Origin: Hydrolagus colliei
Taxonomy: Eukaryota
NCBI GenBank assembly: GCA_035084275.1
Contig: CM068748.1
Span: 6,324,001 to 6,388,000 of the forward strand
Length of the DNA: 64,000 nucleotides
Reading direction: 5' to 3'
The notes under the pieces are model-generated. The model was not told the DNA's origin, searched no databases, and saw only the letters and a list, made by a program, of their open reading frames with translations. Shown piece by piece: positions 4,616-53,973 of the stretch (its first letter is position 1; each line of letters opens with the position of its first letter). The translations under genes and the position numbers were made by a program.

Positions 4616-5041
<426 letters not shown>

Positions 5042-6276: not shown

Positions 6277-6379
6277 CTGATTGTTCATCCAATTGACTGC
6301 TTTATGGAGAATTCCTTCTTCCTTCCCTGCCTCGGGACAGGTTATCAAAAAGTCCACATCATGGCCAATCTCCTTTCCT
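6277..6379 (-). CDS. DNTT: DNTT exon 8 (catalytic DVD): (R)GKEIGHDVDFLITCPEAGKEEGILHKAVNWMNNQ
   Basis: TTTTCACAG| acceptor, CAG|GTAGTT donor, 103 nt; GHDVDF intact. Confidence 0.97.
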
Positions 6380-13165: not shown

Positions 13166-13485
13166 TAATAATAATAATAATAATAAGAATAATAATCCTT
13201 GCATTTGATACAGCACTTTTCACGTCTTCCAGACCTCTCAAAGCGGTTCACAGAATATACTGTAAAGTGAATTGACTGTATATATGTGGGTGAAACGTGG
13301 CAACCAATTGCACACAGAAATGTCCCACAAACAGTCGTGGATTGAAATAACCAATTTTATTTTAGGGATTATTATTACGGATGTGGAGTAAGGAAACTTG
13401 CCCAAAGTTTCACCGTGTCTGGAATCAAAACCAGGTTTCTTGCTTGTTAGGCGAATGCTCTAACCACTGAGCTACAGGATTCCAC
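13166..13485 (-). mobile_element. tRNA-derived SINE, full length
   Basis: A-box TAGCTCAGTGG head, body TGTGGGACA...CAATTGG.TGCC, stem-loop tail and (TTA)n end. Confidence 0.88.
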
Positions 13486-17985: not shown

Positions 17986-18677
17986 CCGTATATCTCCGCT
18001 TATAAGGCGCACCCGCGTATAAGGCACACCCCCCACTTTTTACCTTTTCTTGGTGAAAAAAAACGGAAGCATTTTCAATGATATTGCCGGCAGAAGGGAG
18101 GAGAGACAGGTAGGTAGGGAGAGAGAGCCGGAGAGAGGCACGCAGGCAGGCAGCGTGGGAGAGAGAGAGGGAGAGAGGCANNNNNNNNNNNNNNNNNNNN
18201 NNNNNNNNNNNNNNNNNNNNNNNNNNNNNNNNNNNNNNNNNNNNNNNNNNNNNNNNNNNNNNNNNNNNNNNNNNNNNNNNNNNNNNNNNNNNNNNNNNNN
18301 NNNNNNNNGGGAGAGAGAGAGGGAGAGAGGCAGGCAGGCACGCAGGCAGGGAGAGAGGCAGGGAGAGAGGCAGGCAGGCAGGGAGAGAGAGCGGCAGGGA
18401 GTGAGGCAGGCAGACTGGGCTCGGCAAAAGGTAAACACAGCACTGAAGTCCGCTGCTGCTGCCGCTGCCCAGGCGGCCGAGGCCGAAGCCCCGTCACCCG
18501 CTCCTCCCAACCCCCGCCGGACACTGACCAAACCCCGGCTGACAGCGCGCCGGCCGCCCCTCCTGTTTACTGTATTTCCGAGGCTCAACATTTCTTGTAC
18601 CTGCATATAGGCGCACCCCCAACTTTCGAGATCTTCCGACCTGCAAAAAAGTGCGCCTTATACGCGGAGATATACGG
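17986..18677. mobile_element. Tc1/mariner-superfamily (Tc2-like) non-autonomous MITE
   Basis: 27-bp TIRs CCGTATATCTCCGC(T/G)TATAAGGCGCAC with 1 mismatch; TA on both sides (17984-85, 18678-79); subterminal ATAAGGCGCACCC repeats; GC-rich interior. Confidence 0.9.
18095..18415 (+). repeat. Purine-rich GAGA/GGCA compound tandem repeat containing a 128-N assembly gap (18181-18308)
   Basis: Direct reading; explains the low-complexity ORFs at 17930-18610. Confidence 0.9.
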
Positions 18678-18863: not shown

Positions 18864-18996
18864 CTTCTAAATCCTCCAGTTAAAGTCACGGTGGCAGTAG
18901 GTACACATTTGTGGACAATATTTTCTATAATTTGGCCCACAGCATTTGCTTCTGCCTTGCGTACACAGCTATTGATGTCTTCAGAGTACATCAAGC
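18864..18996 (-). CDS. DNTT: DNTT exon 7: (G)LMYSEDINSCVRKAEANAVGQIIENIVHKCVPTATVTLTGGFR(R)
   Basis: TTCCCTCAG| acceptor, AAG|GTGAGT donor, 133 nt; TGGFRR nucleotide-binding motif. Confidence 0.97.
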
Positions 18997-21700: not shown

Positions 21701-21841
<141 letters not shown>

Positions 21842-22901: not shown

Positions 22902-22973
22902 CTTTGTTGCTTTGTATCGTTCATCACAGAGCAAACTCTCAACTTTAGAGGATGTGCCATCTTCCAAGATTCC
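22902..22973 (-). CDS. DNTT: DNTT exon 5: GILEDGTSSKVESLLCDERYKATK
   Basis: TTTTACATAG| acceptor, AAG|GTAAGC donor, 72 nt. Confidence 0.95.
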
Positions 22974-23651: not shown

Positions 23652-23822
23652 CTCAATTATAACTCTAGTTCGGACTTCCATGTTGGGTAATCCCTCTAAC
23701 ATGTTCATACTGCTGATGGTATAAGGAAGAGATTTCAGCACCGATGTTGCTCTTGCAAAAACCACATAGGATTGTTCATCTTCATTGAACTCACAGTTTT
23801 CTGCTAATATCTCCAATGCATC
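23652..23822 (-). CDS. DNTT: DNTT exon 4 (8-kDa domain): DALEILAENCEFNEDEQSYVVFARATSVLKSLPYTISSMNMLEGLPNMEVRTRVIIE
   Basis: CCTGCAG| acceptor, GAG|GTGAAA donor, 171 nt. Confidence 0.96.
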
Positions 23823-27957: not shown

Positions 27958-28270
27958 GTGGAGTCCTGTAGCTCAGTGTTTAGAGCACCCGCCTTACAAG
28001 TGAGTGACCTGGGTTCAATTCCAGGCAGGGGAAACCTTGGGATGTTTACTTACTCCACATGCCTGATCATAATCCATAATAAAAAACAATAATAAATTGG
28101 TCTTTCAATCCACGACTGTCTGTGGAGACAGTGCTGTGCGCAATTGGCTGCCACGTTTCATCCACATATATACAGTCAATTCATTTTACAGTATATTCTG
28201 TGAAGCGCTTTGAGACGTCTAGATGATATGAAAAGCGCTATATCAAATGCAAGGATTACCATTATTATTA
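27958..28270 (+). mobile_element. tRNA-derived SINE, full length
   Basis: A box TAGCTCAGTGT, B box GGTTCAATTCC, standard body and tail. Confidence 0.9.
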
Positions 28271-32557: not shown

Positions 32558-32900
32558 GGAGTCCTGTAGTTCAGTGGTTAGAGCAGTTTCCTGTCAAGTA
32601 GTAGCCCTGGGCTCAATTTCCAGCAGGAATCATTTACCCAGCATTAAGTAGGAACCCGGTTGTGAGGCAATTCGCAGATTCCTTTTCTGTGGATAATAAT
32701 TCCTTCAAAAAACTAATAATTTGGTCACTCAATCCTTGACTGTTTGTGAGACACTGTTGTGCACAATTGGCTGCCATGTTTCGCCCACAAAATAAACAGT
32801 CAATTCACTTTACAGTATATTCTGTGAAGAGCTTTGAGACATCTTGAAAATGTGATAAGGTGCCATATCAAATACAAAGATTATTATTATTATTGTTATT
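32558..32900 (+). mobile_element. tRNA-derived SINE, variant with TAAGTAGGAACCCGGTTG segment
   Basis: Extra internal segment shared with 38164-38510. Confidence 0.85.
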
Positions 32901-35567: not shown

Positions 35568-35684
35568 CGTAAATATCTTGTTTCTATTGTTGAGAGTAGT
35601 TCTCCTCTGACATGCGTATTGAGAAACAGCTGTCACTTTTGAGACCGGTTCAGGGGCTGATTGTTCTGGACAGGTCTTATGTGT
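35568..35684 (-). CDS. DNTT: DNTT exon 3: THKTCPEQSAPEPVSKVTAVSQYACQRRTTLNNRNKIFT
   Basis: Polypyrimidine tract + CCTTAG|, donor ACG|GTAATG, 117 nt; SQYACQRRTTLNN motif. Confidence 0.96.
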
Positions 35685-40272: not shown

Positions 40273-42581
40273 AGGGTAAATATACAGTCAATTCACTTTA
40301 CAGTATATTCTGTGCAGCGCTTTGAGATGTCTACAAGATATGAAAAGCACTGTATCAAATGCAAGGATTATTATTATATGTTCCACTGGAGCGAGAACTT
40401 AGGGACTGATATTTCACCCATCTTGCCTTGTTTAGAAAAGGAATGATGCACATATCAAAAGGATGCTTCCTCTGGTTGCTCGTTCTCCTTGCAAGTCAGA
40501 ACAATAAAACTGAAGCTGGATGAGTGTCAGACCAGAATGTTTTTTGGACGCTGCTGCTGAATGTTATGTGATCTGTGAACTTAGATTCTGTCTATCACTG
40601 TGAAATGACAAAATTTAGCACATTCCAGTCTTTCATTCTCATGCTGTTCCTAATTGCAAAGTAGCTTCCGAATGTTCCTCCTTTTCCATTTCAACATTTG
40701 TATAGCGACGTTCATGTCAGGAGGATATCCTAAAACACTGGACAGTCAGGGATCCACACCTGAGCTGATGGATTTTTCACATATTGTACAGTATTGTATT
40801 TCTTATTTAAGTCATCATGCTACACTGCCATCTGGTGGGTTGCACTTGTACATACAACAGTATTGTTAACCACAATAAGTATATTAATGAAACTGTCACA
40901 AGTGAACAATGCTCAATATTATTTGTTTTGCAAATACAAATGGTAATAATTCCTTCAAAAATAATAATTTGGTCACTCAATCCATGGCTGTTTGTGGGAC
41001 ACTGCTGTGCACAATGCACAGCATTGGTGGGCTGCCACATTTCGCCCACCAAATAAACAGTCAATTCACTTTACAGTAGATTTTGTGAAGCTCTTTGAGA
41101 AGTCTTGAAGATGTGAAAAGGCCCAATATCAAATGCAAGGATTATTATTATTTATTATTTGCATTCAAAGCAGCTTTAGGATCAATTGTTTAGGGTAATT
41201 GATATGCTCAATTGTCTAGCCTTTTATACTGCTGCCTTTGGAAGATTTACAAGACAAATATTAAAATGATGAAGCTATTTATTGTGTATGATAGCTCCAT
41301 AATTAAAATATCTATCAAAAGCACAATACATATAGAGTGTTTCCCAAACTAAGATTTTTCGAATGATTAACAGACGATAGGGAGATACCTTTCAAATCTA
41401 ATCACAGTTCCGACCACATTGTAAATTATTGATTGGATGGTGAGACGATAGTGGAATAGTGACAGTGAGTTGCCAGATCATAACAGATATTATAGTATGC
41501 AACCTATTATATGCATATGTTATAGCATCAACAGGAATAAGTTCTATAATGATTGTGATCTAGTTATTCTTAACCTCTTCCTTCTTTGTCAATTGAAAAA
41601 AATATGTTCTGCATCTGAAAGCTTAATATCAATGAACAACGTTTTAACTTTATTTCTGTAATTGGTTTCAATATATCTCCCCACCCTAAACTTAGCAGAA
41701 TCCTTCCTAGATCTGGCTGAGCCCAACAGACTCATCCTGAGGGTCTAGTGGAATGTCACTAGAGATTGGGATTGAAATTCTGATTCTCTGAAACAATCGT
41801 GATGTTTTATTCACATAATTTCAATACTGTACGTGTCTTGAAATACAGTGTATGACACCCAGCTCCTGATGAATCTTAATTTTGTAACAACAATATTTTT
41901 AGACTTGTTCTATTATATAACAGCTGGGAAGCCAGGGAAACAAGCCAGAAGAATAGATGTGATAATAAAGAATCTATGTGTCTTCATCTTTTTCCTTTCA
42001 CCATTTTGACTGTTTCATCCCAACCACTTCCCCTCCCCACCCCACTTGCTTACAATACTAACTCTGGCATAAGGAAGTTAATTTTAGGATCTCAGTCTGA
42101 ATAATTCATATGGCTGTCTTGTAATTGTTACCAGATGGATCATATTATTCAGACTTTTAAATGGAAATGTTGATTTGCATTTACATTTTGCACATTAAAA
42201 AGCTGTACTAAAATTCCAAGTGTTCAGTAACCAAAATGAGTTTTCATTGCAAACTACCACTATGAGCAAAATAAATATGGGCTATCAGAACTATTTTAGA
42301 AAGAGTTTTGACTCCTTTCGTATAAATTTGTGTTTTACTGGCTTGTTGCATTCTTTCATACCATTACGTACCATTGCTACAACAGCAGCTTGTATTTTTA
42401 TGGCGCCCTTTATGCTGGATGGCGTCTCAGAGCTCTTGCTCAGCTAAACATAGTGTTAGAAAACCTGCTCCCAGTCTTACTTTTAAATGCAGAAGGTGAT
42501 TCACAAGACTGGCAAACATTGACTTGTCTTCTGAATTAAACTTGCTCCTCAAGGGAAGCATCACCTTCACTGTGTTCCTTT

Positions 42582-47985: not shown

Positions 47986-48160
47986 CTGCAGTCTATGTCT
48001 TTCCTGTATATCCACAGGTTTTCCTGCGCCCATGCTGTCTGTGAACCAGGAGATATCCAACATCTCAAATGTGTTCGTGTTTGACAGCTTGTGTGTCTGG
48101 ATCCAGTCCCAAATTTCATTCCAAGAGTTGTTTTCTGCCACAATATGTGTGACTGCATCA
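47986..48160 (-). CDS. DNTT: DNTT exon 2 (BRCT): (S)DAVTHIVAENNSWNEIWDWIQTHKLSNTNTFEMLDISWFTDSMGAGKPVDIQERHRLQ
   Basis: Acceptor TTATAG|, donor CAG|GTAAC, 175 nt, phase 2 to 0. Confidence 0.97.
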
Positions 48161-53764: not shown

Positions 53765-53973
53765 CTCAGCTCATCATTGACTCTGAATCATTTTTTACGA
53801 GCTAAATCCATCAGAAAGGTTCTTCTGGTTGATCCCATTTTTCGTTCTACGATAAATATGTTCAGTTCTTGAAATTTTATTTTATATTCATTGTGTGAAC
53901 TAGAGTCTGCTACTTTCTTTCTTTTCATTTTGGGTAAAATCCCTGTTCCCCCCATTCTATCTGTTGAAGCCAT
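53765..53973 (-). CDS. DNTT: DNTT exon 1 (NLS + BRCT start): MASTDRMGGTGILPKMKRKKV...TFLMDLARKK*FRVNDEL(S); in-frame TGA at 53790-53788
   Basis: ORF track 53788..53973; homology continues past the stop (FRVNDELS) to donor AG|GTATGT, phase 2. Confidence 0.95.

What the first reader, a model, noticed from the sequence alone, without database searches (positions are those of the whole stretch)
53788..53790. In-frame TGA at codon 62 of an otherwise intact TdT (DNTT) gene
Seen: exon 1 reads CGT AAA AAA TGA TTC AGA GTC AAT GAT GAG CTG AG|GTATGT (RKK*FRVNDELS). All eight downstream exons in the window keep frame, splice sites and catalytic Asp residues, and no GT before the stop gives an in-frame splice to exon 2. 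Established: vertebrate TdTs, including shark TdT as I recall it, have RKKGFRV here, so this is a single GGA>TGA change. TdT adds N-nucleotides at V(D)J junctions. Inference: a very recent loss-of-function allele or lineage-specific TdT loss in a cartilaginous fish, a heterozygous variant, or a consensus error next to the A6 run. The context (TGA TTC) is not the UGA-CUAG readthrough motif.
Basis: partly seen in the sequence, partly recalled or inferred. Interest (0 to 1): 0.85.

Follow-up and report, generated by a model that had tools for sequence, protein, structure and literature searches.

The report
Lone stop codon in chimaera TdT
The gene for TdT, the enzyme that adds random nucleotides to antibody and T-cell-receptor junctions, carries one premature stop codon in this chimaera-like fish assembly but is otherwise perfectly preserved, so it is either a very young knockout allele or a single-base assembly error, not an established gene loss.

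Summary
On the minus strand, codon 62 of DNTT exon 1 is TGA (53790..53788). The other 467 codons in nine GT-AG exons are open, and the catalytic Asp residues are present. The window is collinear over about 63 kb with the Callorhinchus milii DNTT locus, so it is the true ortholog in a different holocephalan. C. milii reads GGA at this codon and 23 of 23 other jawed-vertebrate TdTs have Gly, so this is one G>T change. The stop falls in the middle of the BRCT domain, upstream of every catalytic domain. No in-frame alternative donor, SECIS, readthrough context or local RNA structure rescues it. The gene shows no decay: dN/dS is about 0.3, lineage-specific replacements are 14 against 12, branch lengths are equal, and no other invariant column has changed. 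If the stop is real, it arose within the last 10-18% of the lineage's history. The tools hold no reads, transcripts or sister-species sequence, so a real young or polymorphic null allele (about 0.55) cannot be separated from a consensus error (about 0.35). A long-standing TdT loss is disfavoured. Interest is moderate to low until reads are checked.

The parts
53788..53790 (-). In-frame TGA at codon 62 of DNTT. It replaces a Gly (GGA in C. milii) that is universal in the compared TdTs.
53791..53796 (-). A6 run (Lys-Lys, AAA AAA) immediately 5' of the stop. C. milii has AAG AAA here, so a synonymous G>A sits 4 nt from the nonsense change.
53765..53973 (-). DNTT exon 1, 209 nt. It holds the start ATG at 53973-53971, the NLS-like PKMKRKK at 53934-53914, and the first half of the BRCT domain. 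The donor is AG|gtatgt.
47986..48160 (-). Exon 2, the second half of the BRCT domain. It holds the first in-frame ATGs after the stop: codon 103 at 48063-48061 and codon 113 at 48033-48031.
35568..35684 (-). Exon 3, the linker and the start of the 8-kDa/HHH domain (SQYACQRRTTLNN).
23652..23822 (-). Exon 4, the HHH_8 domain.
22902..22973 (-). Exon 5.
21718..21841 (-). Exon 6, the fingers domain ([13 protein letters not shown]...).
18864..18996 (-). Exon 7, the start of the palm domain, ending in GGFRR.
6277..6379 (-). Exon 8, palm domain, with two catalytic Asp residues in GHDVDF (6360-6358 and 6354-6352).
4742..5041 (-). Exon 9, with the TdT-type loop1 ([20 protein letters not shown]) and the third catalytic Asp in IRVDLV (4804-4802). 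It is the last exon in the window. Exons 10 and 11 lie beyond position 1.

Best explanation
The window carries the orthologous DNTT (TdT) gene of a holocephalan other than Callorhinchus. The sequenced haplotype bears a real, evolutionarily very young nonsense allele, GGA>TGA at Gly62.

Translation would end after 61 residues. That product holds the NLS-like motif and half of the BRCT domain, and it lacks the 8-kDa, fingers, palm and thumb domains. It therefore has no polymerase activity. A stop in exon 1 of an 11-exon gene should also expose the mRNA to nonsense-mediated decay. The allele is therefore a predicted null.

Nothing else in the gene has decayed. The allele is most likely polymorphic, possibly heterozygous in the sequenced animal, or only very recently fixed. 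It is not an established loss of TdT.

Shown here: the stop, the orthology, the single-base origin, the domain position, and the absence of decay and of rescue routes in the window. Inferred: that the base is real, NMD, the null phenotype, and the population status.
For: - **Stop and intact remainder:**
- **Orthology:** the best hits are C. milii DNTT. The window is collinear with C. milii DNTT locus L001 positions 292-57807, including introns at 75-87% identity. The window protein is sister to Callorhinchus in an ML tree. TdT scores 374 bits against 294 for Pol mu and 91 for Pol lambda in the PDB.
- **Single-base origin:** the C. milii codon is GGA, and Gly is present in 23 of 23 orthologs.
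- **Domain position:** Pfam BRCT spans residues 32-113 in intact C. milii TdT, and neither piece of the window protein reaches the threshold. The abutting alignments to 2COE confirm the split.
- **No decay:**
  - dN/dS is 0.26-0.34 with dS 0.13-0.18.
  - There are 14 window-derived against 12 C. milii-derived replacements, p=0.85.
  - Terminal branches are 0.053 against 0.050.
  - The stop is the only change at 88 invariant columns.
- **Age bound:** about 17 further disabling events and about 14 invariant-site replacements would be expected had the gene been neutral since the split. This limits the age of the stop to under 10-18% of the branch.
- **Type of fault:** it is a substitution, not a homopolymer length change, which is the less typical error of long-read consensus (my own knowledge).
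Against: - No reads, transcripts, second individual or sister species could be reached. A search with the 61-residue pre-stop piece found nothing.
- The pattern seen, one lesion in an otherwise perfectly constrained gene, is exactly what a consensus error would also produce.
- The related C. milii assembly has a probable single-base fault in exon 7 of the same gene. This shows that such faults occur in holocephalan assemblies.
- The published non-Callorhinchus holocephalan assemblies include a PacBio/wtdbg2 assembly and a fragmented Illumina assembly (PMC12952989). The window's source assembly and its base accuracy are unknown.
- TdT is conserved in all jawed vertebrates compared, which lowers the prior for a null allele.
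Confidence: 0.55

Rival explanations
1. The TGA is a consensus or base-calling error in the assembly. The animal's DNTT reads GGA and is fully functional.
For: - There is a single lesion, and every other measure indicates a gene under normal purifying selection.
- The site adjoins an A6 run.
- A probable 1-nt fault occurs in DNTT exon 7 of the related C. milii assembly. Its RefSeq model reads GGFRGEGKE, whereas models from the older assembly read the universal GGFRRGKE.
- The known chimaerid assemblies come from error-prone long reads or from fragmented short-read data (PMC12952989).
Against: - The fault is a G>T substitution that preserves length. Homopolymer-associated errors are usually length changes, and any length change here gives a frame that quickly hits stops (and inspection of the sequence).
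- The 1,404 coding bases in nine exons contain no frameshift at all, so local base quality is not obviously poor.
- Individual genomes do carry real nonsense variants in dispensable genes, and TdT-null mice are viable (my own knowledge; TdT-/- mice are used in PMC3181008 and PMC8270943, listed).
Confidence: 0.35
2. This is an established lineage-specific loss. TdT became a unitary pseudogene in this holocephalan lineage long ago, and the animals make antigen receptors without N-additions.
For: The stop lies early and upstream of all catalytic domains. No protein from this species appeared among the database hits.
Against: - There is no second disabling change in 467 codons or 17 splice sites.
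- dN/dS is about 0.3, the replacement counts are equal to those of the functional C. milii gene, and no change occurs at 87 further invariant codons.
- Roughly 31 such events would be expected if the gene had been neutral since the split. The 95% bound on the age of the stop is 10-18% of the branch.
Confidence: 0.03
3. The stop is bypassed and functional TdT is still made. Possible routes are UGA readthrough or selenocysteine insertion, A-to-I editing to UGG, alternative splicing or an alternative promoter, or reinitiation at Met103 or Met113.
For: - The downstream exons are under purifying selection, as they would be if the gene still worked.
- Met113 has a good Kozak context, gacagcATGG.
- A catalytic core without the BRCT domain is active enough to crystallise with substrates (PDB 1JMS and 4I27; PMC12173826).
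Against: - No in-frame GT or GC donor lies upstream of the stop.
- All C. milii isoforms with alternative 5' ends still include codon 62.
- Orthologs have Gly (GGA) at this codon, not Cys or Sec.
- There is no SECIS or other Rfam match in the window.
- The local RNA folds no better than shuffled sequence, with z-scores of 0.01 and -0.77.
- TGA T is not a known leaky context.
- Four out-of-frame ATGs, two of them opening 61-74 codon ORFs, precede Met103.
- A product starting at Met103 or Met113 would lack the NLS-like motif and nearly the whole BRCT domain, which recruits TdT to the NHEJ/V(D)J complex (PMC12173826).
- Purifying selection is equally well explained by the stop being very young or not real.
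Confidence: 0.05

Closest known systems
Callorhinchus milii DNTT (XP_042192593.1 and Ensembl/UniProt models A0A4W3JJY2 and others)
   Same: - The locus is orthologous and collinear over about 63 kb.
- The exon-intron structure is the same.
- Exons are 89-95% identical at nucleotide level and about 90% at amino-acid level over 466 codons.
- The N-terminus is the same (MASTDR.GGTGILPKMKRKK).
- The long loop in exon 9 is the same.

   Different: C. milii has GGA (Gly) at codon 62 and an open reading frame. The window has TGA there. Divergence is dS about 0.16 and non-coding K about 0.14, so the window comes from a different and distant holocephalan genus.
Engineered TdT-null mice, and the physiological lack of TdT in fetal lymphocytes
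   Same: If the allele is real and homozygous, the predicted outcome matches these cases: viable animals whose Ig and TCR junctions lack N-nucleotides and are largely germline-encoded (my own knowledge; TdT-/- models and the fetal repertoire are described in PMC3181008, PMC8270943, PMC5034271 and PMC10833529, listed).
   Different: Those are laboratory knockouts or a developmental stage. This would be a natural germline allele in a wild cartilaginous fish, and its zygosity and frequency are unknown.
Natural losses of core adaptive-immunity genes in fishes (MHC II/CD4 in cod, RAG/AID pathway genes in some anglerfishes)
   Same: It would be a loss of function in a gene regarded as a fixed part of jawed-vertebrate adaptive immunity (my own knowledge).
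   Different: Those losses are fixed, shared across species and accompanied by gene decay or deletion. Here there is one base change and no decay. I found no report of DNTT loss in cartilaginous fish.
DNA polymerase mu (POLM), the closest paralog
   Same: It shares the BRCT plus Pol X core architecture and scores 294 bits against PDB Pol mu chains. The end of the BRCT domain (LDISWFTDSMGAGKPV) resembles Pol mu as much as it resembles mammalian TdT (and my own recall).
   Different: TdT chains score higher, at 374 bits. The loop1 region and the palm align to murine TdT without gaps. All top database hits are DNTT, and the locus is the DNTT locus.

Membership tests
TdT / DNTT (Pol X family) | Closest similarity is to TdT rather than to Pol mu, lambda or beta. 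| tested here: met
   The top 120 hits are all DNTT, with C. milii best. PDB scores are TdT 374 bits, Pol mu 294, Pol lambda 91 and Pol beta 71. The window protein is sister to Callorhinchus inside the cartilaginous-fish TdT clade.
TdT / DNTT (Pol X family) | Orthologous genomic position. | tested here: met
   The window is collinear with C. milii DNTT locus L001:292-57807, introns included. In C. milii an SH2-domain gene lies head-to-head upstream.
TdT / DNTT (Pol X family) | Catalytic aspartate triad in the palm domain. | tested here: met
   GHDVDF and IRVDLV align identically to murine TdT 1JMS.
TdT / DNTT (Pol X family) | TdT-type loop1 between palm strands. | tested here: met
   [24 protein letters not shown] aligns without a gap to [24 protein letters not shown] of 1JMS. 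This is a sequence-level test only.
TdT / DNTT (Pol X family) | N-terminal BRCT domain. | tested here: not met
   The domain is split by the stop. The pre-stop piece matches no Pfam family, and the post-stop piece scores 16.7 bits against a cut-off of 21.3. Intact C. milii TdT scores 40.8 bits over residues 32-113. Both halves are recognisable against PDB 2COE.
TdT / DNTT (Pol X family) | 8-kDa/HHH, fingers, palm and thumb domains. | tested here: inconclusive
   Fingers scores 65 bits and palm 37 bits, both passing. HHH_8 scores 29.1 against a cut-off of 30, the same as in C. milii. The thumb domain (exons 10-11) lies outside the window.
TdT / DNTT (Pol X family) | Uninterrupted open reading frame. 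| tested here: not met
   There is one TGA, at codon 62.
TdT / DNTT (Pol X family) | Template-independent nucleotide addition, and N-regions in Ig/TCR junctions. | not testable with these tools
   This needs an enzyme assay or repertoire sequencing.
Unitary pseudogene (established gene loss) | Several independent disabling lesions and/or relaxed constraint (dN/dS near 1, accelerated branch). | tested here: not met
   There is one lesion only. dN/dS is 0.26-0.34, lineage-specific replacements are 14 against 12, branches are 0.053 against 0.050, and no other invariant column has changed.
Unitary pseudogene (established gene loss) | The lesion is fixed in the species or shared by relatives. | not testable with these tools
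   No other individual or chimaerid sequence is available.
Recoded UGA (selenoprotein or programmed readthrough) | Orthologs carry UGA or Cys at the site, a SECIS element is present, or a leaky context or stimulatory structure follows the stop. | tested here: not met
   Orthologs have Gly (GGA). There is no SECIS in the window, although the 3' UTR lies outside it. The context is TGA T and the local fold z-scores are 0.01 and -0.77.

The most novel reading that the evidence does not exclude
The TGA is real and fixed, or at high frequency, in this chimaera species. That would make it a natural TdT-null jawed vertebrate of very recent origin, at most about 10-18% of the time since its split from Callorhinchus. 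Its Ig and TCR junctions would lack N-nucleotides. It would be the first documented loss of TdT in a wild vertebrate lineage, caught before any secondary decay.
Probability: 0.1. Interest if true: 0.75.

Novelty: new member of a known kind. Interest (0 to 1): 0.33.

Why it matters
TdT generates most junctional diversity of antigen receptors. It was present and intact in every jawed vertebrate compared here, and I found no report of its loss in cartilaginous fish. A wild species or population lacking it would be a natural experiment on how much N-region diversity matters for immunity, in the oldest lineage with V(D)J recombination. As it stands, the evidence is one base in one assembly. The practical value of this result is twofold. 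It identifies the locus precisely: it is the ortholog, in a chimaera, with a single G>T change. It also rules out an old loss, so that one read pile-up can settle the matter.

Tried and rejected
- **Other individuals or species.** I searched the protein collection with the 61-residue pre-stop piece to find exon-1 ORFs from other animals. There were no candidates. The collection evidently holds no exon-level ORFs from eukaryote genomes, so I ran no further search on exon 9.
- **Exact look-up of P0001.** It is not on record. I fetched the C. milii locus through cluster member P0121 instead. Two 45-residue ENA members of that cluster proved unrelated.
- **Alternative in-frame GT or GC donors upstream of the stop.** There are none.
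- **Frameshifting or slippage on the A6 run.** Both shifted frames hit stops within a few codons and are out of phase with exon 2 (inspection of the translations).
- **Second copy of exon 1.** tblastn found none elsewhere in the window.
- **SECIS and other RNA families.** Only three tRNA-like SINE heads matched.
- **Stimulatory or editing RNA structure around the stop.** The fold is no better than shuffled sequence.
- **Neighbouring gene as a quality check.** I used tblastx to look for coding exons of the neighbouring SH2-domain gene in 52-64 kb. No strongly conserved block turned up, so this gave no extra check on assembly quality.
- **Literature.** I found no report of DNTT loss or pseudogenisation in cartilaginous fish, and none on TdT in holocephalans beyond reviews.
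- **Source species and assembly.** I could not identify them. I only note which holocephalan assemblies the literature lists.
- **Human TdT from memory.** I used it once, only to locate exons. All conclusions rest on database sequences.

Full report
**1. What is in the sequence.**
- The gene lies on the minus strand. From the ATG at 53973-53971, exon 1 reads MASTDRMGGTGILPKMKRKKVADSSSHNEYKIKFQELNIFIVERKMGSTRRTFLMDLARKK, then TGA at 53790..53788 (codon 62), then FRVNDEL and a consensus donor AG|gtatgt.
- I located the remaining exons with a from-memory human TdT used only as a probe. I then fixed their boundaries by splice sites and phase. There are nine exons between 53973 and 4742. All are AG...GT and all phases are compatible.
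- The model has 468 codons with exactly one stop.
- Exons 10 and 11 are not in the window. In Callorhinchus milii they map beyond the point that corresponds to window position 1.
- The N run at 18181-18308 lies in intron 7, next to a 36-nt GA-rich tandem repeat. I left it alone.

**2. What the gene is.**
- The 406-residue post-stop piece finds only DNTT proteins. The best hits are three C. milii models at 72-84% identity, depending on isoform. Sharks and rays follow at 63-73% and bony vertebrates at 51-57%.
- Against solved structures, murine TdT scores 374 bits, Pol mu 294, Pol lambda 91 and Pol beta about 70. GGFRRGK, GHDVDF, the loop1 segment and IRVDLV all align to 1JMS.
- I fetched the C. 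milii DNTT locus as L001 from GCA_018977255.1. The window aligns to it collinearly from L001:292 to 57807. Exons are 89-95% identical and introns 75-87%.
- This is therefore the true ortholog and not a duplicate or retrocopy.
- The source is a holocephalan clearly distinct from Callorhinchus, with dS 0.13-0.18 and non-coding K 0.14. An ML tree places it as sister to Callorhinchus.
- The literature lists Chimaera phantasma (PacBio, wtdbg2) and Hydrolagus affinis (Illumina, fragmented) as sequenced non-callorhinchid holocephalans. It gives about 187 My for the chimaerid-callorhinchid split (PMC12952989). I cannot say which assembly the window comes from.

**3. Nature of the change.**
- All 23 other gnathostome TdTs compared have Gly at this column, within an almost invariant LAR+KGF motif.
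- The C. milii genome reads CGT AAG AAA GGA TTC where the window reads CGT AAA AAA TGA TTC.
- The stop is thus one G>T transversion from GGA, outside any CpG. A synonymous G>A 4 nt upstream creates the A6 run.
- The pre-stop piece aligns to positions 16-48 of the human TdT BRCT structure 2COE, and the post-stop piece starts at position 50. Exactly one residue is replaced, and nothing is inserted or deleted.

**4. Consequence.**
- In intact C. milii TdT the Pfam BRCT match spans residues 32-113. In the window, neither piece reaches the BRCT threshold.
- A 61-residue product would carry the NLS-like PKMKRKK and half a BRCT fold, and none of the polymerase domains.
- With at least eight, and by homology ten, exon junctions downstream, the message should be an NMD target. 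This is an inference from general knowledge.
- The allele as written is therefore a predicted null.

**5. Rescue routes examined.**
- None of the seven GT or GC dinucleotides upstream of the stop leaves the required phase.
- All alternative 5' ends seen in C. milii models join upstream of codon 62 and still contain it.
- There is no second exon 1 in the window.
- Shifts of +1 or -1 at the A run meet stops at once.
- No SECIS or other Rfam family is present apart from tRNA-like SINE heads. The 3' UTR is outside the window.
- The spliced and unspliced RNA around the stop fold no better than shuffles, with z-scores of 0.01 and -0.77.
- The next in-frame ATGs are codons 103 and 113. Four out-of-frame ATGs lie before them, two of which open ORFs of 61-74 codons.
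- A product starting at those ATGs would lack the NLS-like motif and almost all of the BRCT domain, which recruits TdT to the end-joining complex (PMC12173826).

**6. Is the gene decaying?** It is not.
- Over 466 comparable codons against C. milii there are 38 synonymous and 48 non-synonymous codon differences. dN/dS is 0.26-0.34.
- I polarised the replacements with eight elasmobranch TdTs. Fourteen are derived in the window lineage and 12 in the C. milii lineage (p=0.85).
- The ML terminal branches are 0.053 and 0.050.
- Among 88 columns invariant in 23 other TdTs, the only departure in the window is the stop itself.
- I estimated what neutral decay would have produced, using the locus's own non-coding divergence: K 0.144 and 0.016 indel events per site, split equally between the lineages. 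The sequence offers 218 stop-creating single-base changes.
- A gene neutral since the split would have gained about 17 disabling events and about 14 replacements at invariant codons. Seeing none bounds the age of the stop at 10-18% of the branch at 95%. That is roughly 18-33 My on a 187-My scale, with a median of about 4-8 My.
- A long-standing loss is therefore disfavoured.

**7. Real allele or error?** The tools cannot decide this. There are no reads, transcripts, other individuals or other chimaerid sequences.

In favour of a real allele:
- The fault is a length-preserving substitution and not a homopolymer length error.
- The nine exons contain no frameshift.
- Individual genomes do carry real nonsense variants in genes whose loss is tolerated, and TdT-null mice are viable (my own knowledge; such mice are used in papers listed).

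In favour of an error:
- One lesion in an otherwise perfectly constrained gene is exactly what an error would look like.
- The C. milii long-read assembly itself is 1 nt short at the end of DNTT exon 7. This forces its RefSeq model to read GGFRGEGKE, where older-assembly models and all other species read GGFRRGKE.

My weights are:

| Reading | Weight |
|---|---|
| Real young allele (of which fixed in the species about 0.1) | 0.55 |
| Assembly error | 0.35 |
| Stop bypassed, functional TdT still made | 0.05 |
| Old loss | 0.03 |

**8. Comparison with what is known, and novelty.**
- The gene is an ordinary member of the TdT family in every respect tested except the open reading frame and, as a result, the intact BRCT domain.
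- I found no report of DNTT loss or pseudogenisation in cartilaginous fish.
- If the allele is real and frequent, it would be a natural counterpart of the TdT knockout mouse in the oldest V(D)J-bearing lineage.
- On present evidence it is a candidate loss-of-function variant or a base error. Hence the moderate-to-low interest score and the filing as a new member of a known kind: a nonsense allele of a known gene.

Noticed in passing
L001:~40760-40775 (C. milii GCA_018977255.1), corresponding to window 18864-18875: The C. milii assembly is 1 nt shorter at the 3' end of DNTT exon 7: GGATTCAG-AG|gtgagt against GGATTTAGAAG|gtgagt in the window. Its RefSeq protein XP_042192593.1 reads GGFRGEGKEIGHD. 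Ensembl models from the older assembly, and all other species, read GGFRRGKEIGHD. This is probably a single-base assembly fault or variant in the relative.
   Followed up: partly
window 18181-18413: The only N run (128 N) sits in intron 7, directly beside a 36-nt GA/CT-rich tandem repeat (18309-18413, 2.9 copies). It looks like a gap inside a low-complexity array. I did not fill or look up the letters.
   Followed up: no
window 32560-32631 (+), 27965-28029 (+), 13410-13481 (-); also about 51.6-51.9 kb, 15.1-15.4 kb, 13.2-13.5 kb and 43.0-43.5 kb: There are tRNA-like Rfam matches and a roughly 300-bp interspersed repeat family. They are probably tRNA-derived SINEs scattered through the DNTT introns. 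Copies of the same families also occur in the C. milii locus.
   Followed up: partly
window ~52.2 kb onward on the + strand (equivalent to L001:1-11948): In C. milii an SH2-domain gene of 566 aa (BLNK-like, by my recollection of the conserved BLNK-DNTT neighbourhood) lies head-to-head with DNTT. Its annotated 5' end sits inside DNTT intron 1. The window aligns through this region, but tblastx showed no strongly conserved coding block in 52-64 kb.
   Followed up: partly
window 4850-4905 (exon 9): Exon 9 encodes a stretch about 18 residues longer than mammalian TdT ([23 protein letters not shown]) between loop1 and the last catalytic Asp. The stretch is shared with the C. milii RefSeq model and, in a different sequence, with sharks and rays. 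Some Ensembl C. milii isoforms splice it out.
   Followed up: no
window 53794 (- strand, third base of codon 60): A synonymous AAG>AAA difference from C. milii lies 4 nt upstream of the nonsense change and creates the A6 run. The two differences are clustered, but their cause is undetermined.
   Followed up: no
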